Virus record (IMG/VR): IMGVR_UViG_3300005613_000002 | Coordinates: 186,001 to 250,000 of that record | Length of the DNA stretch: 64,000 nt | Direction: 5' to 3' (one strand) | Shown: piece by piece, positions 14,733 through 39,238 of the stretch | Numbering within the stretch: the stretch's first letter is position 1 | How the letters are laid out: each line of letters starts with the position of its first letter | Notes under the pieces: model-generated | Database searches by the model: none | What the model was told of the DNA's origin: nothing | What the model saw: only the letters and a program-made list of their open reading frames with translations | Program-made: the position numbers and the translations under genes

Positions 14733-14862
14733 TAACAGTGAATAGCATAATGGAGTACGATAAGCTAAGTACAGGATGCGCAGGACTTTAAGTTTTATTT
14801 TTAAATGCATGTGGAAATAAAATTGTCGCTGAGAAGTGGGGTTGAATTCCCCAACACTGTTA
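14733..14862 (+). ncRNA. tRNA-like RNA with insertions in D-loop and anticodon loop (nominal anticodon TTA)
   Basis: Acceptor TAACAGTG/CACTGTTA; TAGCATAATGG...ATGC D-arm; CAGGA-CTTTAA then 34-nt hairpin insert then TC(G)CTG; T-arm TGGGG-TTGAATT-CCCCA. Confidence 0.6.
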
Positions 14863-14865
14863 AAC

Positions 14866-14924
14866 GGTATTGAGTGAAGTTGTTTTGGAATTCACACCAG
14901 TAGGTTCGAAACCTGCCGATACCA
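14866..14924 (+). ncRNA. 59-nt tRNA-like RNA lacking one arm
   Basis: Acceptor GGTATTG/CGATACC + A; T-arm GTAGG-TTCGAAA-CCTGC; only one other hairpin GTGAA/TTCAC. Confidence 0.65.
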
Positions 14925-14936
14925 CACCAAAACCAA

Positions 14937-15060
14937 CCGAAAGGATGCATTCTGTTTCGGCAAGGGTTATACTCTGGGGTTCTGCTTACCCTTTAAAGCA
15001 GGAGTATAAAGAAGTTGTGGGCATTATTAAGGGACACTCTTGATACGAAACAACTTCTTT
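14937..15060 (+). ncRNA. structured RNA segment (hairpin, pseudoknot, long hairpin)
   Basis: CCGAAA/TTTCGG; TTATACTC/GAGTATAA enclosing CTGCTT/AAGCAG; AAGGGT/ACCCTT; AAAGAAGTTGT/ACAACTTCTTT. Confidence 0.55.
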
Positions 15061-15118
15061 GAAATTAATTAAAAATATTTGTCTGTCACTATACTTTAAA
15101 TTGTCGTTTAGTTGTGTG

Positions 15119-15150
15119 AAATGCCGTATAGAAATGTACGGTATTTTTTT
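15119..15150 (+). terminator. terminator of ncRNA cluster, abutting next promoter
   Basis: AAATGCCGTATA-GAAA-TGTACGGTATTT plus U-tract. Confidence 0.8.
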
Positions 15151-15178
15151 GTAACATTATTGAGCAATCTACGTATAA
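15150..15178 (+). promoter_or_regulatory. ECF-type phage promoter
   Basis: TGTAAC-N16-CGTATAA. Confidence 0.85.
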
Positions 15179-15204
15179 TAATTATAACATTTAAAACATA
15201 CACA

Positions 15205-15462
15205 ATGAAATATCAAGATTTAAAAAACAGACATGACACATTAGAACAAGATATTCTTGCTGCTTTGAGACATGAAGTTAATTCCAGCAAGAAAATGTCT
15301 AAACATATTAATGATGTCGCTATTGAAGTTAATGTTTATGATTATCATGAACTTGCAATCATTCATGATGAACTTGCATTCATGGATGAAAACGGATATC
15401 AATATTCAGTTTATGCTGAATGTTCGCTTGAAGATTTAATTGACATTTTAAGTAAAATCTAA
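15205..15462 (+). CDS. hypothetical protein
   Basis: Start moved from 15112 to first ATG after promoter. Confidence 0.7.
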   Translation: MKYQDLKNRHDTLEQDILAALRHEVNSSKKMSKHINDVAIEVNVYDYHELAIIHDELAFMDENGYQYSVYAECSLEDLIDILSKI

Positions 15463-15674
15463 TGATTAAATTATTAAATATTGGAGAAATAGATGGTGGT
15501 ACTATTAGACTACAATCACAATTATTAGTTGGAAGTGATACTGCTGATTTTATCTTAGAAAATAATGAATTAAAACATTGGGAAAATGGTAATAAAGGTT
15601 TTAATTTTTATAAAACCGATATACCATATGAAATTTTCACAGATAAAAAGGATATGGTTAGGCAACGATTATAA
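15462..15674 (+). CDS. hypothetical protein
   Basis: TAATG coupling. Confidence 0.65.
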   Translation: MIKLLNIGEIDGGTIRLQSQLLVGSDTADFILENNELKHWENGNKGFNFYKTDIPYEIFTDKKDMVRQRL

Positions 15675-15689
15675 TTAAAAACAATTATT

Positions 15690-15989
15690 ATGGCATACAA
15701 TATTAATACACATGGTGATTTTAAAAATTGGTGGTGTAAAAAACAAAAGAGAACATATTGGATTCTTGGTTATTTCGGTGGTGGTTCAATAAGTATATCA
15801 GATGCATATGAGTTAGCAAAACAATATGCCAAAGCAAATAATGTTGCTATTGAAACTGTTCAAATTGATGAAGTACCAAGTTCTCGAAGATATAAATATT
15901 TCAAATTTATATTTTCAACTGCATTAGAACAAGTTCCAGCTAAAGATAGCACTGAAATGGATAATGTTTATGAATGGTTAAGAGATTAA
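15690..15989 (+). CDS. hypothetical protein
   Basis: Co-oriented ORF. Confidence 0.7.
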   Translation: MAYNINTHGDFKNWWCKKQKRTYWILGYFGGGSISISDAYELAKQYAKANNVAIETVQIDEVPSSRRYKYFKFIFSTALEQVPAKDSTEMDNVYEWLRD

Positions 15990-16045
15990 TTTTAATTAAA
16001 AATACTATTAAGTTAGGTATTAGTTCCATAATGCCTCCTTTCTTT

Positions 16046-16080
16046 AAGTGTCAGTCCCGTTAAGACTGGCACTTTTTTTT
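16046..16080 (+). terminator. intrinsic terminator abutting next promoter
   Basis: AAGTGTCAGTC/GACTGGCACTT plus U-tract. Confidence 0.85.
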
Positions 16081-16108
16081 GTAACATTAATTAAAAATTT
16101 ACGTATAA
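16080..16108 (+). promoter_or_regulatory. ECF-type phage promoter (1 of 3 tandem)
   Basis: TGTAAC-N16-CGTATAA. Confidence 0.8.
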
Positions 16109-16192
16109 ATAAGTGGTCGGCAACCTAAAGTTGTGGAAAGAATAAACCTTACTATGGATATAATTGATCTAATAAGCATTATTTAAATTAAC

Positions 16193-16221
16193 TGTAACCT
16201 TTTTTAATTAAAAACGTATAA
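16193..16221 (+). promoter_or_regulatory. ECF-type phage promoter (2 of 3 tandem)
   Basis: TGTAAC-N16-CGTATAA. Confidence 0.8.
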
Positions 16222-16267
16222 ATAATCGAAATCACAATTATTCTATTTAAAAAATGTTTTGATTAAT

Positions 16268-16296
16268 TGTAACATTTATATTTAATATACGTATAT
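16268..16296 (+). promoter_or_regulatory. ECF-type phage promoter (3 of 3 tandem)
   Basis: TGTAAC-N16-CGTATAT. Confidence 0.8.
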
Positions 16297-16329
16297 TTGT
16301 ATAGAACATAACACATTAAAAATACTATC

Positions 16330-18654
16330 ATGGAAATTAATTTACTAGAATTAAGTACACAAGGTGTTGAAAGTACAACCACTGCAAGAAAAATGGGAAT
16401 GTCAAAGAATGCACAATCAATGGTATTCCAATTGTTTACAAAAAATGTATATTCTAATCCAATTGGTACAGTTGTACGTGAAATTACTTCCAATTGTTTT
16501 GATAGCCATGTTGAAGCCAAAGTTAAATCTCCTGTACTTATCAAGAAAACCTATGATGAACAAACTAAAACACATTATATATCATTTATTGATTTTGGTG
16601 TTGGTATGTCAGAAGAAAGGATTTATGAGATTTATGGTGTATATTTTGAAAGTACCAAACGTGTTGATAATACACAAATTGGTGGTTTTGGAATTGGTGG
16701 TAAAACTCCATTAGCATATAAACGTTCAACAGGTCAAGGTGATGGTGAATATGATAATAGCTTTTATATTATCACTAATTATAATGGTACTCGTTATTAC
16801 TATTGCATATATGAAGGTGCTGATGCTCCTGTAATTTCCCCTTTACATTCTGAACCAACAACAGAAAGAAACGGAACTGAAATTCGTATTCCAGTTTTAG
16901 AAAAAGATATGGATGACTTTGCTAAAGAAATGGTACGTCAACTTTATTATTTTGAAGATGTTATTTTTGAAGGTTTTGAAGATGCTTGGAGGCATGGTGA
17001 AACCTTATCAAATGAGTATCAAATATTCAGAGGTAAAACATTCTTATTTAGAGGTGACGATTATTTGAGCAATGTACATATATGTTTGGGTAGAGTTGCT
17101 TACCCAATTGATTATTCTGTTTTAGGTTTATCTTCTGGTGAATATAATTTACCAGTTGCAATTAGACTTGAAGTTGGAGATTTAAATGTTACAGTTTCAA
17201 GGGAAAGTATTGATTATAGTGAGTCTACAATCAAGATGTTAAAAAAGAAATTGGTTGAGGTGAAAACTGAAATTATTGGAATGATGGTGAAACAATATGA
17301 AAATATTGTTACCCTTGAAGATTATTTCAAAATGAAAACCGATTTTGGAAACTATACTTTTAGCAATGGGAAAAGTATTTCAGTTGGAAATGTTGTTAAA
17401 GAAAAAGATATTGATTTTACAAATTTCAATTTCAGTTTCATGAAAATGCCAACAGATAAACAATTGTTTAATTTGTTCTTCAATGTTAAATCTTATGGTA
17501 AAAAACCTAATAGAAGTCGTTATGGTAGTAGTAGTAATGAATTCGAAGGTGGTTATAAAGAATTACTTTCAAGTTCAAACCTTTATCATTTTAATAACGT
17601 TTTTAATCGTAAGGTTATTAAACAATCTTATTTAAAATCAGAACACATATTGTACCATATCATTAATCGTGAAAATTTGTCACAACCACATTTGCGTCAT
17701 AAGATTACTGAATTGTTCAATGTACATTTAGATTCACTTGTTGATGAAAATGGTGTTCCTGTTCAATTTGTTCAATCATTAATGGCAATGCAGGATGAAT
17801 ATTTTACCATTGTACAAGATCAAACTGTATGTTACGATACTTTGGAAGTTCCAGAAGATTTTATTGCAGAAAGAAAGAACCGTAATAAAATCACTGATGA
17901 TATGAGGAAATTAACATTTCCAATAAAATTCATGTGTGAATATTCTGGAAGTCCTACAAGAGTAAAACTAGATCATTTATTTAAATTTAATATGCCTATC
18001 TTTTATGGTACTACTGACGATGAATTTAAATTAGAAAAAGCTAGTAAAATATATAGACATTTGTTTAATGAGAAATTTTTAATAACTGGTTATTCTGAAT
18101 ATGGTTATAACAATAGTGTTGATAAATTTAATAGAGTAGGACATGATTCAACACAAAAAGCTGGAATTATGTTTATCAGAATAGCAAAAGGAAATGTTAA
18201 ATATATGAAGTTTTGCAAAAATGCAAATCATATTGATACTGTTTATGATAAACTATTCAAACGTAAAGAAAAAGTAGTTTTGAATTATTTTAAAACTTAT
18301 CAATTATTTAATAGTTATAATAATCTGGATGATTTATATAAAGATAAACATTTTGGATTAATTGATGAAAATTGGGGTGAAACAATTATTAAACTCAATA
18401 CTGATATTACTAAAATTAAGGATTCTTTATTGGTGAAAGATTTGGAATATATTGAATCATCATTAAGTCATTATTTTAATATTGATAGAAATAAAATTGA
18501 TAAGAAATACGATAAATTAATAAAAGCTATTGATGATCTGGTAATGTTGGAAGAAGTAAATAAAGATATTGTTGAATTTATTCGTATTCCACATAGTTTA
18601 GAATATGGAAATAAAAAACTATTTCCACTATTGAAAAAAGTAATGATATTATAA
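16330..18654 (+). CDS. rIIA: RIIA-like protein with N-terminal GHKL ATPase domain
   Basis: VYSNPIGTVVREITSNCFDS, FIDFGVGMS, GGFGIGGK, SRESI; adjacent to rIIB-like gene. Confidence 0.85.
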   Translation: MEINLLELSTQGVESTTTARKMGMSKNAQSMVFQLFTKNVYSNPIGTVVREITSNCFDSHVEAKVKSPVLIKKTYDEQTKTHYISFIDFGVGMSEERIYEIYGVYFESTKRVDNTQIGGFGIGGKTPLAYKRSTGQGDGEYDNSFYIITNYNGTRYYYCIYEGADAPVISPLHSEPTTERNGTEIRIPVLEKDMDDFAKEMVRQLYYFEDVIFEGFEDAWRHGETLSNEYQIFRGKTFLFRGDDYLSNVHICLGRVAYPIDYSVLGLSSGEYNLPVAIRLEVGDLNVTVSRESIDYSESTIKMLKKKLVEVKTEIIGMMVKQYENIVTLEDYFKMKTDFGNYTFSNGKSISVGNVVKEKDIDFTNFNFSFMKMPTDKQLFNLFFNVKSYGKKPNRSRYGSSSNEFEGGYKELLSSSNLYHFNNVFNRKVIKQSYLKSEHILYHIINRENLSQPHLRHKITELFNVHLDSLVDENGVPVQFVQSLMAMQDEYFTIVQDQTVCYDTLEVPEDFIAERKNRNKITDDMRKLTFPIKFMCEYSGSPTRVKLDHLFKFNMPIFYGTTDDEFKLEKASKIYRHLFNEKFLITGYSEYGYNNSVDKFNRVGHDSTQKAGIMFIRIAKGNVKYMKFCKNANHIDTVYDKLFKRKEKVVLNYFKTYQLFNSYNNLDDLYKDKHFGLIDENWGETIIKLNTDITKIKDSLLVKDLEYIESSLSHYFNIDRNKIDKKYDKLIKAIDDLVMLEEVNKDIVEFIRIPHSLEYGNKKLFPLLKKVMIL

Positions 18655-18666
18655 TCATTACTTTTT
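18635..18666 (+). terminator. hairpin at rIIA stop fused to next -35
   Basis: AAAAAGTAATGAT/ATCATTACTTTTT perfect 13 bp. Confidence 0.6.
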
Positions 18667-18694
18667 GTAACAAAATTTTAATTAATACGTATAA
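18666..18694 (+). promoter_or_regulatory. ECF-type phage promoter
   Basis: TGTAAC-N16-CGTATAA. Confidence 0.85.
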
Positions 18695-18726
18695 TAATAA
18701 ACAAACATTAATAAACAATAATAATC

Positions 18727-19923
18727 ATGAAAAACATTCAAGGTGTAAAAATCGGAAATGTTGTAAATCTATCAATTGATGGTAGACTTTGCAAAAAGAA
18801 TTGTGGTAGTCCAGAAGAAGCAGATGAACTTTTTCGTTTGGTACTAAAAGCAAAAGAAAACCCAACGGATGAAAATGTGAAAAACATTCGTGTTTATCTG
18901 AATGAACAAACTCGTATTGCAATGCTTGCTGGATTAGAATCAGATGTAGATACTGGTGAAGTATTCTTAGCTGGCTTTAATACTCCTGTACCTGAAACTC
19001 TTTTGGAAGTTATTAAAGAGTACCATGAAAATAAGTATCCTTTAGATGCTGTTATCAATTTCTGGAAACTCTTAATGATTAATCCAGATACACGTGTTCG
19101 AACTTCATTGTTTGATTTTATTAAATCACATGACTTTGTTTTAACTGATAAAGGTTATATGGTGGTTTATAAAGCAGTTTACTTGAAAGAAGCAAAAGTA
19201 AACACACCTGAGAAAAAATATGTGGAATTCCTTTCAAACAAATATCTTCATGTGAAAAAAACATGGAAATGTTCACCTAACAAATATGTGGCATATAAAA
19301 TTCTTGAAGATAATTCATATGGAATTACCAAAACAGTAACTGCTGAAAAATGGGATGAAAAGGAAAAGAACATTGAAATCTTAGGTAAACTTGGTGACTT
19401 ACATAAAGCCATTATTGAAAATAAGGTTGAAGTTAAAGAAGACCTAGCACCATTGTACACCGATATGTATTCAAAAACTATGAGTATCCAACTTGGTGTA
19501 CCAGTTTGTCAAGAAAGAAAAGATTGTAATGGAAATCCAAAAATAGAATGTTCTGATGGTTTGCATTGTGGTGCAACAAAATATGTTGAAAACTATGCAA
19601 ATAGAAGTTCTGCAATCTTAGCTTGTTTTGTTAATCCTGCAAATGTAGTTGCTGTTCCAGATTACGATAAATCAAAAATGCGTACCTGTGAATATTTCCC
19701 TTTTGCAGTTGCAACATTCGAAAATAAAAAGATTGACATTATTGAACAATCATATTTTGAAGAAGATTATTGCAATTATGAATCTACCGAATTAGAAAAA
19801 CAAATTGCAAAGATCAAAGCAAATGAACTTCCAATTGCAACAGCAAAGAAAGCTGAAAAGGAAACCCGACCAATGGTCGAACTTATGAAAATACTTGAAA
19901 CAAGATTAGTTGATATTGTGTAA
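18727..19923 (+). CDS. rIIB: RIIB-like protein
   Basis: LINFW..LM.NP, LTDKG..V.YKAV, CSDGLHCG..KY, VNPANVVAVP.YD.SKMRTCEY. Confidence 0.85.
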   Translation: MKNIQGVKIGNVVNLSIDGRLCKKNCGSPEEADELFRLVLKAKENPTDENVKNIRVYLNEQTRIAMLAGLESDVDTGEVFLAGFNTPVPETLLEVIKEYHENKYPLDAVINFWKLLMINPDTRVRTSLFDFIKSHDFVLTDKGYMVVYKAVYLKEAKVNTPEKKYVEFLSNKYLHVKKTWKCSPNKYVAYKILEDNSYGITKTVTAEKWDEKEKNIEILGKLGDLHKAIIENKVEVKEDLAPLYTDMYSKTMSIQLGVPVCQERKDCNGNPKIECSDGLHCGATKYVENYANRSSAILACFVNPANVVAVPDYDKSKMRTCEYFPFAVATFENKKIDIIEQSYFEEDYCNYESTELEKQIAKIKANELPIATAKKAEKETRPMVELMKILETRLVDIV

Positions 19924-19933
19924 TGTTTGTGTT

Positions 19934-19965
19934 AAACCTTCCTGTATAATGTACAGGGAGGTTTT
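19934..19965 (+). terminator. intrinsic terminator
   Basis: AAACCTTCCTGTA/TACAGGGAGGTTT. Confidence 0.7.
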
Positions 19966-20013
19966 AGTTTATTAACAAACATTAAGGGTAATAATCGTTT
20001 TAATTAAAAAAAT

Positions 20014-20292
20014 ATGAGTAAAATATATTTATCAGCAGACATAAGGGAAATTAATAGTTTTAACTTTACAGTTGAAGTTGATGATAATCTACCTATAACA
20101 AAAGCAGTTGAAGTTGCTAAAGATAAATTAAAAGCACATCTGGATGTTCAATGTCCAAACCCTTTACAAAGTTCACCAGATAAGAATGGAATTCATTGTT
20201 ATGATTGTGAAGGTTCTGTTGAAACCGAAGACACCGTTTCTATTGATGTAAATAATACATTACATAAAATTCAATCGATAACAACAAAATAA
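20014..20292 (+). CDS. hypothetical protein
   Basis: Co-oriented ORF. Confidence 0.65.
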   Translation: MSKIYLSADIREINSFNFTVEVDDNLPITKAVEVAKDKLKAHLDVQCPNPLQSSPDKNGIHCYDCEGSVETEDTVSIDVNNTLHKIQSITTK

Positions 20293-20297
20293 TTATC

Positions 20298-20777
20298 ATG
20301 GATATCAATACTAAAAGAAAATATAAAAAAATTAGTAAAAATTTATATAAAGCAGCTACTAGTTGTATTGTATTATTTTTTATTGTTCTAATTGTATTAG
20401 GAACAAAAAAAATTGACGCATCAAATTTAAATGCTGCTTGGGGTATGGTAATAATTATGTCACCAATATTCATTGGGTTATTCTTTGCTTTCTTTGGTGC
20501 TATATATTATGAATATTTCAATAGCTATCATAAAAAAGTTATTGAATATCGTAAACGTTTCCATATTACCAAGATTTATGAATTTATTGATATTGGTGAT
20601 TTCGAGAAAGCTATTCCTATCTATAACAATCTTAAACAAAGTATGGATAAGGATATGTTGTACATCTATTTAATTAAATCTTCAATGGATTCAGATGACC
20701 CCAAACAAAAAGCTAAAGGTTTAGAGAATTATAATGTTATACGCAACTGGTATGATGTTGAAAAAGTTTTTAATTAA
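20298..20777 (+). CDS. two-TM membrane protein
   Basis: Two hydrophobic helices at N-terminus. Confidence 0.7.
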   Translation: MDINTKRKYKKISKNLYKAATSCIVLFFIVLIVLGTKKIDASNLNAAWGMVIIMSPIFIGLFFAFFGAIYYEYFNSYHKKVIEYRKRFHITKIYEFIDIGDFEKAIPIYNNLKQSMDKDMLYIYLIKSSMDSDDPKQKAKGLENYNVIRNWYDVEKVFN

Positions 20778-20779
20778 TA

Positions 20780-21028
20780 ATGGCTAACAGAAAATCAGGA
20801 AAAGAACTTAGAAAGGAATATCAAGACCTTCTGGATAAGACCAAGGCAATGCGTAAACGCATTATTAAAAGAGCAGAAGATTTAATTAAAAGATATCCAA
20901 ATGTTGTTGTAAATGATTTTGATCTATATAAACTAAATATACAAGCAGCAATGTCCATTATTGAAAAAATTGAAGAACATATTGCTGACAAACATCCACA
21001 TCAACAAACTAAAATGTTTAACACTTAA
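20780..21028 (+). CDS. hypothetical protein
   Basis: Co-oriented ORF. Confidence 0.7.
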   Translation: MANRKSGKELRKEYQDLLDKTKAMRKRIIKRAEDLIKRYPNVVVNDFDLYKLNIQAAMSIIEKIEEHIADKHPHQQTKMFNT

Positions 21029-21038
21029 AAAATACATA

Positions 21039-21449
21039 ATGAAAAAAGCTAAAGTATTAGAAATAAAAACTTCAGAAATAAAAACTTCAGTAAATAGAAT
21101 TACTGAAAAAGTAATTCTTTTAGAAAAAAAGAATAAAGATTTTTTCTTGAAAGTCAATTCATTATTATATAATCCAATATATAATGGCTTCCATGAACTT
21201 AGAAAAATCAATGATGATGATACTGTTGTCATTAGTGATTGTTGTAATTATCTTATTGACGCAACAACAACTATCTCCAATAATAAAGTAAAGGTTGATT
21301 ATTTAACTAAACTAAAACCAGTTTATAAACTTCATAATTTTATGGAATATTGTAATACTGTTAAGGCGTGGAGAGTTAAAAAAAGTTTAGGACATAAATC
21401 ATACTTGTTCTATAAAGATATTAATGTTATTAATATCTTCGAACATTAG
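21039..21449 (+). CDS. hypothetical protein
   Basis: Start moved from 20961 to avoid overlap. Confidence 0.65.
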   Translation: MKKAKVLEIKTSEIKTSVNRITEKVILLEKKNKDFFLKVNSLLYNPIYNGFHELRKINDDDTVVISDCCNYLIDATTTISNNKVKVDYLTKLKPVYKLHNFMEYCNTVKAWRVKKSLGHKSYLFYKDINVINIFEH

Positions 21450-21452
21450 ATA

Positions 21453-32807: not shown

Positions 32808-33225
32808 TATTTTCTAAATTAAAAAATTCCAACCAACTAGTGATATCATGTTCAAGATTACGTTCATCGATTAAAATATATGAGTGTTTATTTTTTACTT
32901 GTTTATATAGTTTATTTTTCTTAAAACATATTTCACCATTTCTAACCATTCTTTTTGTTGTATTACAACGCCAAAATGCATCATAATTAATATTAGCTTT
33001 AGGTTTATTTATAGAATTTTTAAGAAAATACTCATAATCATCCAATATTTCATTAACATCATCAATATTGAACTCTGGTTCATTTTTCATCCATTCAAGA
33101 AGATTAGATAATTTTAAACGTTCAGATTTTTTTTCTTCAATAAATGAAGAAATTTTATATCTAATAGATAATATAATTAATGCTGTAATATATATTACTA
33201 CTCCTGCTAATATTAAATTTTCCAT
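32797..33225 (-). CDS. membrane-anchored hypothetical protein
   Basis: N-terminal TM; start moved from 33273. Confidence 0.65.
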   Translation of the reverse strand: MENLILAGVVIYITALIILSIRYKISSFIEEKKSERLKLSNLLEWMKNEPEFNIDDVNEILDDYEYFLKNSINKPKANINYDAFWRCNTTKRMVRNGEICFKKNKLYKQVKNKHSYILIDERNLEHDITSWLEFFNLENNGI

Positions 33226-33238
33226 AATTATTAATGTT

Positions 33239-33568
33239 TTAATAACAATATAAGGTTTTAGGTAAATAACCATATACGAATTTAGTTACATGACACAGCC
33301 ACACATCGAATTCATACATATCACTTTTAAGATTATATAACCCACCATCTGCTTCATCTTTTTCAAAGGTAAGAATAAATTTTGGATTTTCAACTTTTAT
33401 TTCACTGATATTGAGATGAACTACGTTTTCTCCTTGTGCGATAATATCTAACATAGTATCAGCACCATATACCATTTCAAGTTCAGCTTTATCTCCTTTC
33501 CATTCAGGTAATACTGCATACCATCTATTATCTTCTTCTCTTTCGAATTTGAAATTTTTATTTATCAT
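33239..33568 (-). CDS. conserved hypothetical protein (resembles Bacteroidota DUF6717-like family)
   Basis: WY..LPEW.G.KAELEMV.GADT.LD...WLC.VT..VYG..P..LY. Confidence 0.55.
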   Translation of the reverse strand: MINKNFKFEREEDNRWYAVLPEWKGDKAELEMVYGADTMLDIIAQGENVVHLNISEIKVENPKFILTFEKDEADGGLYNLKSDMYEFDVWLCHVTKFVYGYLPKTLYCY

Positions 33569-33751
33569 AGTATTTCTTGTTAATCCCAATGGTCAACACA
33601 AACATCTCTCTGCATTAAATCAATATATTCAGCTTTTTTCCACAATAATAACAACTATTCTTTAGTTTTTTCTTAATTTTTATTCCTCTAATCCAATATC
33701 CAATGATAAATGATATAATAATTAATATAACTGAAATATATAATTCCATTT

Positions 33752-33961
33752 TTATAGTAATTTGGTTTTAATTAACACATATTCTCCAGTATCATACAGT
33801 TTATCAGCATGTTCTTCATCTGTTAATACAAAAGTTACATTATCACTAGTTCTGTACATAACATAACAATCAGTACCTTTTTCAAGAAAAGGCAAATCAA
33901 TTTGTTCTTGATATTCTTTAACAATACTTTTTGCTTTTAAATAATCTTCTTTTTTAATCAT
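33752..33961 (-). CDS. hypothetical protein
   Basis: Co-oriented ORF. Confidence 0.65.
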   Translation of the reverse strand: MIKKEDYLKAKSIVKEYQEQIDLPFLEKGTDCYVMYRTSDNVTFVLTDEEHADKLYDTGEYVLIKTKLL

Positions 33962-34157
33962 TTTTCTTTTTATCTAATAATTTAATAAAATTCTTAACAG
34001 CAAATTCAGTATTAACATTACTAAAATATGGTGGAGGTGAATATCCTTGCCCACCAACATGTCTAGGATTTACCATTTTTATTTCATAACCTTCTTTATT
34101 TAAGAAGTCAATAAATTCTTGACAACTAACATTTTTAAGTGAATCATTATTTTTCAT
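33954..34157 (-). CDS. hypothetical protein
   Basis: Co-oriented ORF. Confidence 0.65.
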   Translation of the reverse strand: MKNNDSLKNVSCQEFIDFLNKEGYEIKMVNPRHVGGQGYSPPPYFSNVNTEFAVKNFIKLLDKKKND

Positions 34158-34160
34158 TAG

Positions 34161-34409
34161 TTATTTATTTAAACGTACATATTTTTCTAAAACAAAATTT
34201 AATTTATCCATGAATCTTTTATCTGATTCAATTTCTTTAAGCATTTCATATTGATAATTCAATTCCATTGAGTTATCATCATATTCTCCATGTGTTAAAA
34301 ATTGACGAAAATTAGCATTAATAAAATAGTCTACTTCATCAAATTCTTTAATTTCATCAATATCATCATTGATACGTTTTTTTATTTTTTCTCTATCTTT
34401 GTACCTCAT
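34161..34409 (-). CDS. hypothetical protein
   Basis: Co-oriented ORF. Confidence 0.65.
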   Translation of the reverse strand: MRYKDREKIKKRINDDIDEIKEFDEVDYFINANFRQFLTHGEYDDNSMELNYQYEMLKEIESDKRFMDKLNFVLEKYVRLNK

Positions 34410-34602
34410 GTTTTTTTATTACCTTTGTTGTGTCATTTATTTGATATAAAGTATCAACATTAAATCTAAAAAATAAATTAGAATTTCCTATTTTTAGATT
34501 AATTTCAGTAACACTTTTAATAGTTAACGTATTTTTAACACTACTACATGAAGTTAAACAAACAAAGAATATTATTAATAATATTTTAACTATTAATTTC
34601 AT
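34393..34602 (-). CDS. small lipoprotein
   Basis: Lipobox LTSC; DTLYQINDT. Confidence 0.6.
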   Translation of the reverse strand: MKLIVKILLIIFFVCLTSCSSVKNTLTIKSVTEINLKIGNSNLFFRFNVDTLYQINDTTKVIKKHEVQR

Positions 34603-34777
34603 GATTTTTATTTAAAATTTCACCCATAACTGCTCCATCTGTTTTTCTAACAATTAATTTTCGTTCAATTTTAATATTATCATTCATAAATTCAAATATT
34701 ATTTCATCTTCTGTATATCTTTGTTTTTGTGAAGAATCAACAGAAATTCTGACATTTAATATCATTTTTGGTTTCAT
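34586..34777 (-). CDS. hypothetical protein
   Basis: Co-oriented ORF. Confidence 0.6.
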   Translation of the reverse strand: MKPKMILNVRISVDSSQKQRYTEDEIIFEFMNDNIKIERKLIVRKTDGAVMGEILNKNHEINS

Positions 34778-34782
34778 GTTTA

Positions 34783-35346
34783 TTAATTATAAATTAAACA
34801 ACATTTTTTATATTTTTTTCCTGACCCACAAGGGCAAGGTTCATTTCTACCAGCATTAATTGGTTTTGGTTCTTCAAAGGAATAATCTTTAACATCTTCT
34901 TCAATTCCATTAAGATGATTAATTTCATGTTGCCAAATTTGTCCTGAAAACCCTTTGAATATATTAACATGTGGTTGTCCTTCCATGTCATAGTATTTAA
35001 CCTTAACTGCACGTGAACGTTCAGCTACAATTATTTTATCTTTCCAAGTTAAACAACCTTCAACTTTAATATCTTTAAGTCCTAGATATTCAACAATTTC
35101 TGGATTAATAATAATTGACCAATCATCAATTACCATACTACGTAAAGCAAATGCACGTAAACTAAACCTATTTCCGTCTAATGCTGTTTGATTTGCAGCA
35201 AGACCAACTCCATTATCTTTAGTTTTTGCATATTCAAGAAATGCTGAGAGTTCGACTTTATGTTTTTCAATATAGTCATTAACTAATTCATGTTGAATTT
35301 TCCCAATTTCTGGTGTCTGTTCGTTTGGTATGATTGTAAATTTCAT
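34783..35346 (-). CDS. def: peptide deformylase with C-terminal SEC-C motif
   Basis: GVGLAANQ, EGCLT, QHEINHLNG; tail GRNEPCPCGSGKKYKKCC; ATG 35346 chosen over TTG 35367. Confidence 0.92.
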   Translation of the reverse strand: MKFTIIPNEQTPEIGKIQHELVNDYIEKHKVELSAFLEYAKTKDNGVGLAANQTALDGNRFSLRAFALRSMVIDDWSIIINPEIVEYLGLKDIKVEGCLTWKDKIIVAERSRAVKVKYYDMEGQPHVNIFKGFSGQIWQHEINHLNGIEEDVKDYSFEEPKPINAGRNEPCPCGSGKKYKKCCLIYN

Positions 35347-35357
35347 GTAATTATATT

Positions 35358-35555
35358 TTAATTCCAATTATCAAAAGCGAATTCCAAATGGATTTTACCA
35401 AATTTAACTATAAAATCTAAAAATGATTTTCCTGTTATTACCCAAAACAAAATATTAATTATAGCTGATAATCCAATTATAAACATCGTCACAATTATTA
35501 ATGGGATTGAAATTACTTTTGCTAATCGAATTAATATTAATTTAATTGTTTTCAT
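35358..35555 (-). CDS. small membrane protein
   Basis: Long hydrophobic stretch; first gene after promoter. Confidence 0.6.
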   Translation of the reverse strand: MKTIKLILIRLAKVISIPLIIVTMFIIGLSAIINILFWVITGKSFLDFIVKFGKIHLEFAFDNWN

Positions 35556-35561
35556 GTTTAT

Positions 35562-35590
35562 TTATACGTAATTTATTCTCAAATGTTACA
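35562..35590 (-). promoter_or_regulatory. ECF-type phage promoter
   Basis: TGTAAC-N16-CGTATAA. Confidence 0.85.
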
Positions 35591-35591
35591 A

Positions 35592-35822
35592 TTAGTTATC
35601 AAGCCAATCTTTATTATAAATCTTCTCTACTTTATTCTTAGCAATATTAACATGATATATGTAATTTGTATTATCAGTTTTAAACACATATATACTATCA
35701 AGATAGTTATGAATTATAATACTTTCGATTGGTTCATCCACATATTTTTCAAAAAGATTAATTGCAACAGTAAGTTTTCTTTTACTAATTAATTGTGTTT
35801 TTCTATCTTTTAGAATTTTCAT
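35592..35822 (-). CDS. hypothetical protein
   Basis: Co-oriented ORF. Confidence 0.6.
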   Translation of the reverse strand: MKILKDRKTQLISKRKLTVAINLFEKYVDEPIESIIIHNYLDSIYVFKTDNTNYIYHVNIAKNKVEKIYNKDWLDN

Positions 35823-35827
35823 TGGTT

Positions 35828-36172
35828 TTATTTAAGTTTAGTAATTTTATCATTTAATTCATCGACTTCTAATTTTAATAAATCAAGTTTTGTTTTTTCA
35901 ATTTCATATGCTTCAATTTTCTCTATGTTTTCTTTAGTATTTTCAGCAAATGCCCACCCATAATTACATCGATACTTTTCTCCAGTATCTTTAACTATAA
36001 ACTCATAACTATTGTTAGGGAGTTTAACTACATTTTTAACTATAGAATTTGGTAGAATAGGGAAACCACCAAGTTCATTGGGTTTCCAAACCATATCAAG
36101 TCTGTATATGTATTCCATATCAGATTTTGGGTTTTTATTCTCTTTATCAATTAAGAAATCGAAATATGCCAT
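35828..36172 (-). CDS. hypothetical protein
   Basis: TAATG coupling to radical SAM gene. Confidence 0.7.
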   Translation of the reverse strand: MAYFDFLIDKENKNPKSDMEYIYRLDMVWKPNELGGFPILPNSIVKNVVKLPNNSYEFIVKDTGEKYRCNYGWAFAENTKENIEKIEAYEIEKTKLDLLKLEVDELNDKITKLK

Positions 36173-36882
36173 TATAATTGTTTTAGTTTTCTATCCCAAC
36201 TTTGGGAAATTTCACCATCTACATGGAATTTATAACTTTGATATGGGTTTTCTTTAATTACTTTATCATTTCTTTTTATGATATGACCTCTATATTTTAA
36301 TCCTTCAATTTCATCAAACAACACCAATTTTTCAGCGTTTAGTGTATCTAAATAATAAACATTTTGCATCTGTCTAGTCCATTCATTACAAGAGGTTAAA
36401 GTGCTGAATTTCAGATGACCATAATTCTGGTATTTATCGATGAATGAATTAAGTTCATTAGTATTTGGTAATTGCTTTTTATGAATCAATGTAGTAATTG
36501 TAATATCACTAATAAAATCACATTGCATTGGTAATTCTTTTTGATTATAAAAAGAAATATTAAAACAATCAATAATACCATCAAGTTGTTTTATTATTGA
36601 AGGTTTAGTATAATTAGTTGTAAGAATACTTTTAAAACCATATTCTTTTACTAGTTTTGCAATTTCAACAATATTTGGATGTAATGTTGGTTCTCCACCA
36701 ACTATTAATATTTCTTTTAGGTTTAAAGATTTGGCTTTATTAAGTGCTTTAATTACATTTTCAAGTGTAATATACTCATATCTACCTCTGTACTTATCAA
36801 TACAAAATCTACAATATTTATTACATTCATGAGTTACAACTAATGACCCAAATTCTGTTGTTTTCACTTTTCCATCAAACAT
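36172..36882 (-). CDS. radical SAM protein
   Basis: CNKYCRFC (CxxxCxxC), IVGGEPTLHP, LTTNY. Confidence 0.9.
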   Translation of the reverse strand: MFDGKVKTTEFGSLVVTHECNKYCRFCIDKYRGRYEYITLENVIKALNKAKSLNLKEILIVGGEPTLHPNIVEIAKLVKEYGFKSILTTNYTKPSIIKQLDGIIDCFNISFYNQKELPMQCDFISDITITTLIHKKQLPNTNELNSFIDKYQNYGHLKFSTLTSCNEWTRQMQNVYYLDTLNAEKLVLFDEIEGLKYRGHIIKRNDKVIKENPYQSYKFHVDGEISQSWDRKLKQL

Positions 36883-36884
36883 AG

Positions 36885-37181
36885 TTAGTTGTTTTTATTT
36901 ATAAAAGACCAATCAATATCAGCAATAATACATTTATCATCTCTATCACCACAAATCATAGAGAAAACAGGTAATAAACTTGGTAATAACTTGGGGTCAT
37001 TTTCTAATGTTGAAACATATAATGAACATAACACTAGTAATATTCCAGCACTTCTATCATTAATGACTTTAGATTCAAACACTTCAGATTCTAAAACGCA
37101 TTGAATTTCATTTAATCTTCTCCCAGAGGTTTCTGGTTTAGATGCCTCAACTAATAATTTATGTATTTCTTTTGTTTCCAT
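36885..37181 (-). CDS. hypothetical protein, probably leaderless
   Basis: ATG 13 nt after the -10 C. Confidence 0.65.
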   Translation of the reverse strand: METKEIHKLLVEASKPETSGRRLNEIQCVLESEVFESKVINDRSAGILLVLCSLYVSTLENDPKLLPSLLPVFSMICGDRDDKCIIADIDWSFINKNN

Positions 37182-37187
37182 AATTAC

Positions 37188-37216
37188 TTATACGTAATTA
37201 TCATTATTTTGTTACA
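37188..37216 (-). promoter_or_regulatory. ECF-type phage promoter
   Basis: TGTAAC-N16-CGTATAA. Confidence 0.85.
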
Positions 37217-37641
37217 ACTGTGAAGCCAGCATTTTCTAATGCTTTAATTCCTGCCGAATCAGTACCATCAATACTACCATTTTTTTCAACATAGTCAGTA
37301 AGTTGTTTCATCCCATTAATATATTCCAAGAGGTCAGGATATAACACTTTAGCATCACCAAGAATTTTAATTCCCCATTCATCATCATATTCAGTGGCAT
37401 ACCAATTTTTTCCACCATCCCATGAATGTATCATATAATTGAAAAATTTACCATCTTTTTCTTTATCCCAATTTGGTGGGAAATATACTGATGTACCACC
37501 TTGGTGTCTTAAATTAATCTTTGACTGTTCTTCTTGACGTTTTAACATATATTCATAATCACGCAATTTAGGAGCAGTATATAATCCTAAAGCAATTATG
37601 GTCAAACCTAATACTAATGATATAATCAATAATCCTTTCAT
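37204..37641 (-). CDS. membrane-anchored protein with one Asp-box-like motif
   Basis: N-terminal TM; HSWDGGKNW resembles SxDxGxxW. Confidence 0.7.
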   Translation of the reverse strand: MKGLLIISLVLGLTIIALGLYTAPKLRDYEYMLKRQEEQSKINLRHQGGTSVYFPPNWDKEKDGKFFNYMIHSWDGGKNWYATEYDDEWGIKILGDAKVLYPDLLEYINGMKQLTDYVEKNGSIDGTDSAGIKALENAGFTVVTK

Positions 37642-37669
37642 TTTATTTAATTTTAGTTTATTTGTATTA

Positions 37670-37894
37670 TTAAAATTTTTTATAATTAAACATTGGGTAT
37701 TTCTTATTTACAATTTTATGTTGTTCTTCTGTATATGGAATTATTTCTGATTTGTAATAAGAATTAAGTTTTTGAACTACCCCTGTGACCATTTCACATT
37801 GTAAATTATCTGGTTGACAAAAATCAACACCAACATAATAACCTAGATCATAACCGAATCCAGAATCCCATATTATTTTATCATTTTTTTCCAT
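37670..37894 (-). CDS. hypothetical protein
   Basis: Co-oriented ORF. Confidence 0.65.
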   Translation of the reverse strand: MEKNDKIIWDSGFGYDLGYYVGVDFCQPDNLQCEMVTGVVQKLNSYYKSEIIPYTEEQHKIVNKKYPMFNYKKF

Positions 37895-38033
37895 AATAAC
37901 ATTTTTATATTGTTGATGTGCAGGTGGATATTTCCATTAATGCACCAATAAATCCTAGAAATAATATAAGACATATTACACCAAAAAGTATTGTTGAACC
38001 ATATTTTTCACTAAATTCCATCATAATATTTGT

Positions 38034-38615
38034 TTATTGATAATTTTCTGTTTGAATTATTCCATATTTATGAAAATACCTAAGTGGTCGCCACTTGACA
38101 AGTTTTCCAGTTTTTTTATTTGTTACCCAGAAACCCCATTTATGATATGGTCTACTGCATAATAATATAGTCCAAGCACCACCTTTAGGGATACATAACC
38201 AATGTCTATCAGTTGCTTTAGAATACCAAATTGAATCTTGTGGATTGAAAAATGATTTCCATGAATTAAACATTCCTTCAACATGACAGAATGTTTCATT
38301 TCTAAAATGATGTGTACAACCTCTTTTTAAATCAGCACTCATATGTTTATCCATTGGTGTATCACCGATGTATGGTGTTGAATCTTCACGTGTCGGTTTA
38401 ACATTCCAATAATGACCTTTTAATACGATACTAATTAAATCAGTTGCATGGTCATGAAAGAATCTATTATCATCAGATTTAATCCAGTGATGAAGTCTAA
38501 AGGTATAACCAAATAGAATAAGTGTCCACCTATAAAGATATGGTGATTCAGGAATTCCCATTGGTTCTTTCCAACGTATTTGAAATATTCTATTAAATTT
38601 TCTAAATGGTTTCAT
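38034..38615 (-). CDS. cupin-like phage protein, probably leaderless
   Basis: PYL.RW...RLHH...DD...HDH...ISIVL.G.Y; ATG 13 nt after -10 C. Confidence 0.65.
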   Translation of the reverse strand: MKPFRKFNRIFQIRWKEPMGIPESPYLYRWTLILFGYTFRLHHWIKSDDNRFFHDHATDLISIVLKGHYWNVKPTREDSTPYIGDTPMDKHMSADLKRGCTHHFRNETFCHVEGMFNSWKSFFNPQDSIWYSKATDRHWLCIPKGGAWTILLCSRPYHKWGFWVTNKKTGKLVKWRPLRYFHKYGIIQTENYQ

Positions 38616-38621
38616 GATTAC

Positions 38622-38650
38622 TTATACGAAATTAAAGATAAAATGTTACA
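38622..38650 (-). promoter_or_regulatory. ECF-type phage promoter
   Basis: TGTAAC-N16-CGTATAA. Confidence 0.85.
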
Positions 38651-38662
38651 AATAATTAACAT

Positions 38663-38950
38663 TTAAATTTCGATATTACTTGTATCTGTAATCATATCAG
38701 GAAAAGGTTTAGACCATTGAGCACGTTTCATTGAGTTATTCTTTAACTTTAACTCATATGTTAGATTAGTTACGATCATTTTAGAAAAATCAATAACTTT
38801 AGCACTCCCTCGTCTTATATCACTAACTTGAAATTGTGTTGGTTTAATTTCTTTCTTATAAGAAAGAACATTACCACTAAGAGTTTGTGTTGAATCAATT
38901 AAATCTAAATACTTTTGAGGAATTCCTTCTTTTGAATTAATTTTTGACAT
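38663..38950 (-). CDS. hypothetical protein
   Basis: Co-oriented ORF. Confidence 0.6.
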   Translation of the reverse strand: MSKINSKEGIPQKYLDLIDSTQTLSGNVLSYKKEIKPTQFQVSDIRRGSAKVIDFSKMIVTNLTYELKLKNNSMKRAQWSKPFPDMITDTSNIEI

Positions 38951-38968
38951 TTTATTTGTTTTTAATTA

Positions 38969-39025
38969 AAAATGATAGAATTCAAGTGGGTAGTCATACT
39001 AACCATCTTAAATATCTATCATTTT
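38969..39025 (-). other. long imperfect hairpin right after tRNA-like gene
   Basis: AAAATGATAGA/TCTATCATTTT, ATTTAAG/CTTGAAT, TGG/CCA, TAGT/ACTA. Confidence 0.65.
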
Positions 39026-39031
39026 ATTTTG

Positions 39032-39238
39032 TCAACCCAACGGGGTTCGAACCAAACGTGACCTCCTGCATGTTAATACCGCCAATCTATTTCCGATTTC
39101 ATCCAAATTTCATGATATTAGCTTTATATCAATTCATATATTTTACTTTCTTATTTCCACCTTTAGTACCCCATTATCCGTAAACCGCTAAATAAACATT
39201 TAATTAGGACAGGCACTCTACCACTGAGCTATGGGTTG
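39032..39238 (-). tRNA. tRNA-like gene split by about 132 extra nt in the anticodon loop; identity unresolved
   Basis: Acceptor CAACCCA/TGGGTTG + A; TA-GCTC-AGTGGTA-GAGT D-arm; anticodon stem CCTGT/GCAGG; AGGTC; T-arm ACG(TTT)GG-TTCGAAC-CCCGT. Confidence 0.75.

What the first reader, a model, noticed from the sequence alone, without database searches (positions are those of the whole stretch)
14733..39238. Candidate system: a phage set of anticodon-disabled tRNA mimics made from dedicated promoters
Seen: all three tRNA-like genes in the window keep well-paired acceptor and T-arm (elbow) features, but the anticodon arm is interrupted (14733, 39032) or absent (14866). No intact tRNA is present. 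Both loci have their own ECF promoter, flanking structured RNAs and 3' hairpins. Known: host defences include anticodon nucleases (PrrC, RloC, PARIS AriB), tRNA-sensing RelA, and Ro60-bound tRNA-like Y RNAs. Inference: uncleavable decoys, synthetase or RNase sponges, or precursors activated by an undescribed splicing route.
Basis: inference. Interest (0 to 1): 0.8.

Follow-up and report, generated by a model that had tools for sequence, protein, structure and literature searches.

The report
Interrupted valine tRNA-like genes of huge phages
The window of this 322-kb phage holds one real member of a widespread family of valine-tRNA-like genes that carry a large folded RNA inside the anticodon arm, plus one small tRNA-like handle in front of a conserved non-coding RNA. 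A third candidate is weak, and the three do not form a single system with dedicated promoters.

Summary

**c[39031-39238].** This is a tRNA-Val-type gene with a 132-nt insert. ARAGORN finds it only when introns are allowed. The insert lies between the 5' strand of the anticodon stem and a complete 7-nt loop, UUAACAU. Homologs lie upstream of a cupin-fold gene in at least 40 of 77 huge-phage loci.
- The tRNA stems and the two arms of the insert covary.
- A35, C36 and A73 never change across the family.
- U33 is kept in only about 11 of 28 members, against 43 of 44 ordinary tRNAs of this phage.
- My best reading is a stable, non-decoding tRNA-like RNA that valyl-tRNA synthetase (ValRS) could recognise. 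Splicing by an unknown route is the main rival.

**14866-14923.** This is a D-arm-less tRNA-like element. It shows compensatory changes in two relatives. It is an optional 5' add-on to a conserved ncRNA of about 220 nt, and probably a processing handle.

**14733-14865.** This has only a terminal stem and a T-like hairpin. No homolog was found, and the match is near chance level.

**Promoters and genome context.** The promoters are two of about 50 copies of the phage's ECF-type promoter, so they are not dedicated. The genome carries 47 normal tRNAs and a tmRNA outside the window.

**Prior work.** "Enigmatic" tRNA introns were already reported in Lak megaphages (PMC6784885).

The parts
14700..14729 (+). 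Promoter copy (GTAACA-N17-TATAAT, within TGTAAC-N16-CGTATAA) that drives locus 1
   Evidence: It is one of about 50 genome copies.
14733..14865 (+). TL1: an 8-bp terminal stem plus a T-like hairpin (UGGGG UUGAAUU CCCCA). Weak candidate, specific to this phage.
   Evidence: No homolog was found. Its 5' strand overlaps the conserved start region TATAACA of the promoter class.
14866..14924 (+). TL2: a D-arm-less tRNA-like element. Acceptor GGUAUUG/CGAUACC, hairpin GUGAA/UUCAC, T arm GUAGG-UUCGAAA-CCUGC, discriminator A.
   Evidence: Compensatory changes occur in L031 and L036. The L036 copy resembles the 3' end of tmRNA at 22.8 bits.
14925..15152 (+). ncRNA-1: a conserved structured RNA with stem P1, a pseudoknot-type hairpin, a long stem, a conserved single-stranded tract, and a terminator hairpin at about 15117-15150.
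   Evidence: It is present in L031, L032, L033, L220 and L221, with compensatory changes.
39497..39526 (-). Promoter copy that drives locus 2
   Evidence: Homologous loci have the same promoter directly before the tRNA-like gene.
39468..39482 (-). Conserved leader AGUUCUUUAAAAUAU. In relatives it abuts nucleotide 1 of the tRNA-like gene.
39239..39462 (-). ncRNA-2: a structured element of about 225 nt, inserted between the leader and the tRNA-like gene in this phage only. A paralog lies at G000 252722-252950.
   Evidence: The two copies are 64% identical, with 14 compensatory pairs.
39209..39238 (-). 5' body of the interrupted tRNA-Val-like gene: acceptor 5' strand, D arm, and 5' strand of the anticodon stem
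39077..39208 (-). 132-nt insert. Arm A (about 45 nt, apical loop UUUAGCGG) and arm B (about 85 nt, closed by UAC/GUA, with hairpins B1 and B2) form a three-way junction with the anticodon stem.
   Evidence: No Rfam family matches it.
39031..39076 (-). 3' body: the intact 7-nt loop UUAACAU, the 3' strand of the anticodon stem, the variable loop, the bulged T arm, the acceptor 3' strand, and A73-C74
38960..39022 (-). Long A+U-rich hairpin followed by a U run. It resembles a terminator and follows the tRNA-like gene.
   Evidence: MFE structure. The simple scan did not score it.
38034..38615 (-). Cupin-fold gene (193 aa) that accompanies the tRNA-like gene across huge phages

Best explanation
The three RNAs are separate things.

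**(1) c[39031-39238]** belongs to a large family of tRNA-Val-type genes in huge phages.
- Members share C1-G72, A73, normal D and T arms and a 5-bp anticodon stem.
- A folded RNA of 36-170 nt sits directly 5' of an otherwise complete 7-nt valine-type loop. In one subfamily a second domain sits in the variable-loop position.
- The gene is transcribed from one of the phage's many ECF-type promoters.
- The nucleotides that ValRS reads (A35, C36, A73) never change. The nucleotides needed for decoding on the ribosome (U33, purine 37) are often lost.
- I therefore infer a stable, non-decoding tRNA-like RNA. It would be trimmed by RNase P and 3' nucleases and could probably be valylated. Its enlarged anticodon arm would be the working part. 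In principle this resembles tmRNA or the valine-accepting tRNA-like ends of plant viruses.
- Its partner or target is unknown. The neighbouring cupin protein is a candidate by position only.

**(2) 14866-14924** is a minimal tRNA-like element: an acceptor-T minihelix plus one hairpin. It most likely serves as an RNase P / RNase Z cleavage handle that frees the conserved ncRNA downstream.

**(3) 14733-14865** may be a further minihelix-type handle, or a chance fold.

What is shown: the structures, their conservation, the gene neighbourhood and the promoter class. What is inferred: processing, aminoacylation and the absence of splicing.
For: **Family and synteny.**
- Interrupted homologs sit upstream of the cupin gene in G003 and G005.
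- They occur in many viral and metagenome loci.
- By a strict test, at least 40 of 77 non-redundant loci carry one, and 36 of those are interrupted.

**Structure.**
- The acceptor, D and anticodon stems, the base of arm A, the closing helix of arm B and hairpin B1 are each 88-100% paired.
- Each has compensatory changes and each beats the slid controls.

**Position of the insert.**
- The first insert nucleotides pair within arm A.
- The 7 nt before the 3' strand of the anticodon stem read NNN-A-C-N-N in about 28 of 28 distinct members.
- L148 has an uninterrupted paralog with the same stem next to the interrupted copy.

**Decoding constraints.**
- U33 is kept in about 11 of 28 members and purine 37 in about 21 of 28.
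- Ordinary tRNAs keep U33 in 43 of 44 (this genome) and 149 of 158 (fetched loci).

**Splicing machinery and classification.**
- No group I or other Rfam family matches the insert.
- The phage has no EndA and no RtcB.

**Promoter.** The motif has about 50 copies, and the phage encodes two ECF-like sigma ORFs.

**TL2.**
- Compensatory pairs occur in the acceptor and T stems in L031 and L036.
- TL2 is absent from L032, L220 and L221, which keep the ncRNA.
Against: - **No expression, processing or aminoacylation data.** No RNA run was listed.
- **The window's own copy could decode.** Its loop UUAACAU is fully canonical, so it could become tRNA-Val(AAC) if the insert were removed.
- **A34 tRNAs are in use here.** The phage has tRNA-Leu(AAG), and relatives carry intact tRNA-Val(AAC).
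- **A ligation route is conceivable.** The phage encodes two RNA-ligase-family ORFs, one of them inside the tRNA cluster.
- **3' end.** Most members do not encode CCA.
- **The U33 and position-37 counts depend on my placement of the stem.** The scan was noisy and the members were picked by eye from its output.
- **The cupin link may be plain synteny.** In relatives the gene lies within tRNA clusters.
- **TL2 has only three sequences.**
Confidence: 0.45

Rival explanations
1. The insert is a true intron of a new kind. Host nucleases, or RNase P/Z acting on the two stem-closed arms, cut it out. A phage RNA ligase then joins the halves to give a working tRNA-Val(AAC) for GUU codons.
For: - The window's loop is canonical, and the 5-bp anticodon stem is kept with covariation.
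- Uninterrupted members of the same family occur at the same place: L119, L137 and the intact copy in L148.
- The phage has two PF09414 RNA-ligase ORFs, one of them in the tRNA cluster.
- Lak megaphage tRNAs have conserved 'enigmatic introns' (PMC6784885).
- Arg-type tRNAs in L171 and L185 carry inserts at the same 31/32 position.
Against: - U33 is missing in about 60% of family members, and position 37 is a pyrimidine in about a quarter.
- The insert is conserved in sequence and fold well beyond what passive removal would need.
- No known splicing machinery or ribozyme class was found.
- The phage already has tRNA-Val(UAC).
Confidence: 0.3
2. One reading: the RNAs act as decoys or sponges that absorb host anticodon nucleases, synthetases or RNases during infection.
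For: - The tRNA body and ValRS identity nucleotides are kept without decoding features.
- The RNAs are probably expressed from the promoter class that serves the block of small ORFs.
- The genome has other tRNA-like genes with 4- or 6-nt loops.
Against: - To my knowledge no defence nuclease specific for tRNA-Val is known.
- A decoy would not need a conserved 130-nt two-arm domain.
- The phage has no Ro60 gene.
- Nothing in the neighbourhood points to defence or counter-defence.
Confidence: 0.12
3. The gene is a decaying tRNA pseudogene that picked up junk or a mobile insert, and the 14.7-kb elements are chance folds.
For: - TL1 has no homolog, and its pattern is expected about once per shuffled genome.
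- The T stem of the window's copy is irregular.
Against: - The interrupted gene and its insert are conserved with compensatory changes across phages whose neighbouring protein is only 50-75% identical.
- TL2 covaries.
Confidence: 0.05
4. The insert is a very small group I, or other self-splicing or self-cleaving, ribozyme.
For: - Gut huge phages carry many small group I introns of about 206 nt in protein genes (PMC12880540).
- The last nucleotide before the insert is an invariant U, usually in a U-G pair.
Against: - At 36-170 nt the inserts are too small for the group I core.
- Covariation supports only nested helices. No P3-P7 pseudoknot was seen.
- No G is placed to act as the intron's terminal (omega) G with a 7-nt loop.
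- No Rfam ribozyme or intron hit appears even at E up to 10.
Confidence: 0.04

Closest known systems
'Enigmatic' conserved introns in tRNA genes of Lak megaphages (Devoto et al. 2019, PMC6784885)
   Same: - Both involve huge phages with A+T-rich genomes and oversized tRNA genes.
- The inserts are highly conserved, fit no Rfam class, and have no known means of removal.
- A suppressor tRNA(CUA) is also present here.
   Different: - The Lak Tyr example has its insert 3' of the anticodon, at 37/38, and the insert contains a T-arm-like hairpin.
- Here the insert is 5' of the whole loop, at 31/32.
- It belongs to one Val-type family with C1-G72 and A73.
- It travels with a cupin gene.
- The family often lacks U33.
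tmRNA
   Same: A tRNA-like body carries a large internal domain, and the RNA is not a decoder. The TL2 homolog in L036 resembles the 3' end of tmRNA at 22.8 bits.
   Different: - A D arm and an anticodon stem are present here.
- There is no G3-U70, no conserved tag reading frame and no pseudoknot series.
- The phage has a canonical tmRNA elsewhere.
Valine-accepting tRNA-like structures of plant RNA viruses (TYMV type)
   Same: A viral tRNA mimic that keeps the ValRS identity nucleotides of the anticodon loop and the discriminator A, without serving as a decoder.
   Different: - Those are 3' ends of RNA genomes and are built with a pseudoknotted acceptor stem.
- Here the RNA is a free-standing gene of a DNA phage with a true cloverleaf core.
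- Aminoacylation is untested here.
tRNA genes with group I introns (cyanobacterial tRNA-Leu, tRNA-fMet; Azoarcus tRNA-Ile)
   Same: A bacterial-type tRNA gene interrupted in the anticodon loop region.
   Different: - Those introns are about 200 nt or more.
- They lie within or 3' of the anticodon.
- They have the group I core.
- None of these features was found here.
tRNA-like processing handles (mascRNA of MALAT1; tRNA-miRNA units of murid herpesvirus 68)
   Same: This comparison is for TL2. A small tRNA-like element is joined to another non-coding RNA, so that tRNA-processing enzymes could separate the two.
   Different: Those are eukaryotic or herpesviral. Here the element lies 5' of the ncRNA, lacks a D arm, and is optional among relatives.

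Membership tests
Canonical elongator tRNA | Cloverleaf core: 7-bp acceptor stem, D arm with GG, T arm with UUCRANY loop | tested here: met
   Met for c[39031-39238] and its homologs. TL2 has only the acceptor and T arms. TL1 has only a terminal stem and a T-like hairpin without C56.
Canonical elongator tRNA | Contiguous 5-bp anticodon stem closing a 7-nt loop | tested here: not met
   A 132-nt insert lies between the 5' strand and the loop. Default ARAGORN and Rfam at gathering score find nothing.
Canonical elongator tRNA | U33 and purine 37 | tested here: not met
   The window's own copy has both. The family has U33 in about 11 of 28 members and purine 37 in about 21 of 28. Ordinary tRNAs of this phage have each in 43 of 44.
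Group I intron | Match to the group I covariance model and a core with the P3-P7 pseudoknot | tested here: not met
   No Rfam hit at E up to 10 in the window, and none at E up to 0.05 in 13 homologous loci. Only nested helices are supported. The subtype models of the 2025 group I database were not available.
Group I intron | U at the 5' splice site and a terminal G, placed so that a 7-nt loop is restored | tested here: inconclusive
   An invariant U precedes the insert. The insert ends in ...GGUA, so no G lies at the boundary that would give a 7-nt loop.
Protein-spliced (bulge-helix-bulge) tRNA intron | A splicing endonuclease (EndA) and an RtcB-type ligase are available | tested here: not met
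   PF01974 and PF01139 are absent from the phage, and the controls respond. The phage's own tmRNA points to a bacterial host. The bulge-helix-bulge motif itself was not modelled.
tmRNA | Detection by ARAGORN or Rfam; tag reading frame; no D stem | tested here: not met
   No tmRNA is called at either locus. The canonical tmRNA lies at G000 132007-132367. No reading frame is conserved in the insert.
Lak-type 'enigmatic' phage tRNA intron | An oversized tRNA gene of a huge phage, with a conserved insert of no known class | tested here: met
   and PMC6784885. The insertion site differs: 31/32 here, 37/38 in the Lak Tyr example.
Ro60-bound tRNA-like Y RNA (YrlA type) | An Ro60/TROVE gene is present and the RNA matches Y-RNA-like families | tested here: not met
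   The phage has no TROVE gene. No Rfam match was found.
Valine-accepting tRNA mimic | ValRS identity nucleotides A35, C36 and A73 | tested here: met
   These are invariant in 11 close homologs and in about 28 family members. That these positions are the ValRS identity set is established knowledge from E. coli tRNA-Val.
Valine-accepting tRNA mimic | Aminoacylation with valine | not testable with these tools
   This needs an enzyme assay.
ECF-sigma-dependent promoter, dedicated to these RNAs | GTAAC -35 and CGTA -10 spaced about 16 nt, with a cognate sigma factor | tested here: met
   The motif is present at both loci. Two small sigma ORFs with regions 2 and 4_2 lie at G000 185753-186223 and 294230-294667. 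Which sigma factor reads the motif is inferred.
ECF-sigma-dependent promoter, dedicated to these RNAs | The promoter is specific to the RNA loci | tested here: not met
   About 50 copies exist, nearly all before small ORFs between 186 and 276 kb.

The most novel reading that the evidence does not exclude
Huge phages share an undescribed class of tRNA-Val-derived RNAs. The members keep the L-shaped body and the ValRS identity set. They have given up decoding and carry large conserved domains in the anticodon arm or the variable region. Under this reading they are charged tRNA mimics with a function of their own, made from phage ECF-type promoters, perhaps acting together with the adjacent cupin protein. 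An alternative reading, similarly novel and counted separately, is that they are substrates of a bacterial-type tRNA splicing route that joins exons with a phage RNA ligase.
Probability: 0.35. Interest if true: 0.8.

Novelty: new variant of a known kind. Interest (0 to 1): 0.6.

Why it matters
Oversized phage tRNA genes are usually logged as pseudo-tRNAs or as having 'enigmatic introns', and then left alone. This analysis shows one such gene family to be widespread in huge phages from sediment, rumen and gut. Its insert has a defined site and a fold supported by covariation.

The pattern of constraint gives a testable either/or. The synthetase identity nucleotides are kept and the decoding nucleotides are relaxed. 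So the RNA is either a new kind of charged tRNA mimic or the substrate of a tRNA splicing route not known in bacteria. Either result would add to what is known of how large phages handle the host's translation apparatus.

It also shows that the 'system' reading drawn from one window was too strong.

Tried and rejected
- **DNA search of the phage collection with locus 1.** No match.
- **Exact-pattern scans of viral contigs.** The TL2 core, the 5' exon of the interrupted tRNA and the ncRNA-2 core each gave no match.
- **Single-protein locus search with rIIA.** It found nothing. The alignment-based search worked.
- **Contig look-ups.** Two returned no DNA.
- **Rfam in permissive mode.** I ran it on both loci and on 13 homologous loci. 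Only noise came back, apart from the weak tmRNA-like hit for the TL2 homolog.
- **Neighbouring cupin protein.** I considered it as a possible RNA enzyme. Pfam gave nothing, PHROG labels it 'cysteine dioxygenase', and Foldseek gives only generic cupins with TM below 0.5. No function is assigned.
- **ncRNA-2.** I considered a group I intron or an RNase P RNA. It has a paralog behind another promoter and before an ORF, and it has no Rfam hit. I left it as an unknown structured RNA.
- **Pseudoknot search.** A column-by-column search for a partner of the 7-nt loop was uninformative with 11 sequences.
- **Read mapping.** Only one DNA run, holding 7% of the sampled words, was listed, and no RNA run was listed.
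- **My permissive scanners.** They gave many false positives, so the family counts rest on strict criteria and on members I checked by eye.
- **Covariance models.** None was built. The TL2 alignment was out of register for L036, and ncRNA-1 is too long for the calibration limit.

Full report
**Setting.** The window is G000:C1:186001-250000 of a 321,624-bp phage record with direct terminal repeats and 27% G+C. It encodes rIIA- and rIIB-like proteins. Outside the window the genome has 47 ordinary tRNA genes at 43-44 kb and 122-160 kb. These include a tRNA with anticodon CUA. There is also a canonical tmRNA at 132007-132367. So the statement 'no intact tRNA' holds for the window only.

**The promoters.** The motif TGTAAC-N16-CGTATAA occurs about 50 times in the genome. 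Almost all copies lie between 186 and 276 kb, in the direction of the small ORFs that follow them. The copies at 14700 (+) and 39525 (-) are ordinary members of this class. The phage encodes two small sigma factors with regions 2 and 4_2. One lies at the very start of the window. An ECF-type reading of the motif is therefore reasonable, but the promoters are not dedicated to the RNAs.

**Locus 2, the interrupted tRNA.**
- Default ARAGORN and Rfam see nothing in the window.
- With introns allowed, ARAGORN reports tRNA-Val c[39031,39238] with a 132-nt insert.
- The next large gene downstream, 38034-38615 (-), encodes a 193-aa protein. It is conserved at 45-76% identity in many huge phages.
- Upstream of that gene, dozens of loci carry a tRNA-like gene of 110-240 nt that begins with C and ends in ...UGAC.
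- By a strict test, at least 40 of 77 non-redundant loci have it. Of those, 36 are interrupted and 4 are of normal length.
- The fetched relatives come from sediment, landfill-type, rumen and gut samples and include genomes of 300-680 kb.

**Structure of the insert.**
- I aligned 11 close homologs. The acceptor, D and anticodon stems are 96-100% paired, with several pair types per position. When partners are slid the figure is at most 71%.
- The insert forms two arms. Arm A starts at the first inserted nucleotide. Its basal helix covaries: 97% paired, and all 3 pairs have double changes.
- Arm B is closed by UAC/GUA, with double changes in L154 and L145. It contains hairpin B1 (loop NAAGCUN) and hairpin B2 (loop GAUGAAAU).
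- Directly after arm B come seven unpaired nucleotides, UUAACAU in the window, and then the 3' strand of the anticodon stem.
- So the insert lies between positions 31 and 32, and the valine-type loop is intact as one strand of a three-way junction.
- L148 carries an uninterrupted tRNA-Val(AAC) with the same stem sequence right next to an interrupted copy. The 5' half of the interrupted gene in L125 is identical over 29 nt to that intact gene.
- In a rumen subfamily the anticodon stem closes a 38-nt arm plus UGAACAU. A second large domain sits in the variable-loop position.

**What is constrained.**
- In the 11 close homologs A35, C36 and A73 are invariant. Position 34 is A, G or U. Position 33 is U in only 5 of the 11. 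Position 37 is U or C in 5 of the 11.
- Across about 28 distinct members with a perfect 5-bp stem, the seven nucleotides always read NNN-A-C-N-N. U33 is present in about 11 and purine 37 in about 21.
- Ordinary tRNAs of this phage have U33 in 43 of 44 and purine 37 in 43 of 44. In the fetched loci the figures are 149 and 153 of 158.
- A35, C36 and A73 are the main identity nucleotides for ValRS. This is established for E. coli tRNA-Val and for the valine-accepting viral tRNA-like structures.
- U33 and purine 37 are needed for the anticodon loop to work on the ribosome.
- This pattern is the main reason I favour a non-decoding RNA that the synthetase could recognise over a spliced tRNA.
- The window's own copy has a canonical loop, so splicing to tRNA-Val(AAC) cannot be excluded for it.
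- The phage already uses an A34 tRNA, Leu(AAG).

**Possible removal routes.**
- No Rfam intron or ribozyme family matches.
- The inserts are too small for the group I core, and only nested helices are supported.
- The phage has no EndA and no RtcB.
- It has two ORFs of the RNA-ligase family PF09414, one of them inside the tRNA cluster.
- A route in which host nucleases cut at the two stem-closed arms and a phage ligase seals the loop is conceivable but unsupported.
- No RNA sequencing run could be listed.

**The neighbouring protein.** It has no Pfam hit. It matches a PHROG labelled cysteine dioxygenase at E 1e-18. It models as a cupin with pLDDT 82. Only generic cupins are structural neighbours, all with TM below 0.5. 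Its link with the RNA may be functional. It may also simply reflect its position inside the tRNA clusters of relatives.

**Leader of locus 2.**
- In relatives the promoter and a conserved leader, AGUUCUUUAAAAUAU, abut nucleotide 1 of the gene.
- In the window a structured element of about 225 nt (ncRNA-2, 39239-39462) lies between the leader and the gene.
- A paralog sits behind another promoter copy at G000 252722-252950 (-), and an ORF follows it.
- The two copies are 64% identical and show 14 compensatory pairs.
- Its nature is unknown.

**Locus 1.**
- The conserved core is an ncRNA (about 14925-15152) that ends in a terminator hairpin.
- It is present in L031, L032, L033, L220 and L221, with compensatory changes in its long stem and in P1.
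- In L220 and L221 it has its own promoter and no tRNA-like element. In L031 and L032 it follows the stop codon of the upstream gene without a promoter.
- TL2 (14866-14924) precedes it in the window and in L031. A TL2 homolog also precedes a structured RNA in the more distant L036, which nhmmer does not recognise as ncRNA-1.
- Between these three copies, acceptor pairs 3, 4, 5 and 6 and T-stem pairs 2, 3 and 4 change on both sides while staying paired.
- TL2 is unique in the genome. It is absent from the other rIIA-linked loci.
- It has no D arm, and the loop of its extra hairpin changes length, so it has no anticodon.
- An acceptor-T minihelix is the minimal substrate of RNase P. A role as a processing handle is therefore the simplest reading, though it is inferred.

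**TL1 (14733-14865).**
- It has a perfect 8-bp terminal stem. Part of the stem's 5' strand is the conserved start region of the promoter class.
- It also has a 5-bp hairpin with loop UUGAAUU.
- No D arm or anticodon arm can be drawn, and no homolog exists.
- The same bare pattern arises about 1.2 times per shuffled genome.
- Its place exactly between the transcription start and TL2 is suggestive, but I rate it as weak.

**Comparison with what is known.**
- Devoto et al. (PMC6784885) reported that Lak megaphage tRNAs contain conserved 'enigmatic' introns of no known class.
- The present family is the same kind of object. It differs in four ways: a different insertion site, a defined two-arm fold, a consistent Val-type identity with relaxed decoding positions, and a conserved gene neighbour.
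- I found no paper that describes it.
- I therefore class it as a new variant of a known kind.

**Verdict.** The interpretation as one system with dedicated promoters is not supported. For the 39-kb locus, the idea of non-decoding tRNA mimics, or of an undescribed splicing route, stays open and is now sharply testable.

Noticed in passing
window 14925-15152 (+): ncRNA-1 is a conserved RNA of about 220 nt that ends in a terminator. It has a pseudoknot-type hairpin and a conserved single-stranded U-rich tract, and looks like an sRNA. It is present in at least 5 related contigs, with or without its own promoter.
   Followed up: partly
window 39239-39462 (-) and G000:C1:252722-252950 (-): ncRNA-2 is a two-member family of structured RNAs of about 225 nt with GNRA-type loops and a closing helix. 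Each copy lies directly behind a promoter copy. One is followed by the tRNA-like gene and the other by an ORF. It has no Rfam match and no match in viral contigs.
   Followed up: partly
whole genome, dense at window 640-18700 (+) and 26390-63041 (-): About 50 copies of TGTAAC-N16-CGTATAA stand before small ORFs. Two ECF-like sigma ORFs lie at G000 185753-186223 (overlapping window 1-223) and at 294230-294667.
   Followed up: partly
G000:C1:129984-130057, 151233-151303, 148144-148272 (outside the window): The main cluster holds tRNA genes with abnormal anticodon arms. Two have 6-nt loops, one has a 4-nt loop on a 7-bp stem, and one has a 56-nt variable arm.
   Followed up: no
G000:C1:43469-43602 (-), about 43230-43290 (-), and 147679-147833 (+): Further long elements have an acceptor stem plus a canonical T arm and odd interiors. 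The two at 43 kb share the motif GUGUUUACAGUAAU.
   Followed up: no
G000:C1:159544-159617 and 132007-132367: A tRNA with anticodon CUA (an amber suppressor type) and a phage tmRNA are present. I did not check whether TAG is recoded in part of the genome.
   Followed up: no
L171:5092-5335 and L185:797-958: Arg-type tRNAs (loops GUUCUAA and UGCCUAA) of related phages carry inserts of 172 and 88 nt at the same place, 5' of the whole loop. The 31/32 site is therefore not limited to the Val family.
   Followed up: no
L148:2022-2096 and 2112-2336: An intact tRNA-Val(AAC) and an interrupted paralog with the same anticodon stem lie in tandem.
   Followed up: partly
G000:C1:136029-136472 (+) and 270596-271156 (-): Two ORFs of the RNA-ligase family PF09414 are present. 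The first lies inside the tRNA cluster.
   Followed up: no
L140 (JGI10211J34971_10001793): A 17.6-kb metagenome contig carries locus 2. Its cupin gene is 100% identical and nhmmer matches locus 2 over nearly its whole length. It is probably the same phage population.
   Followed up: no
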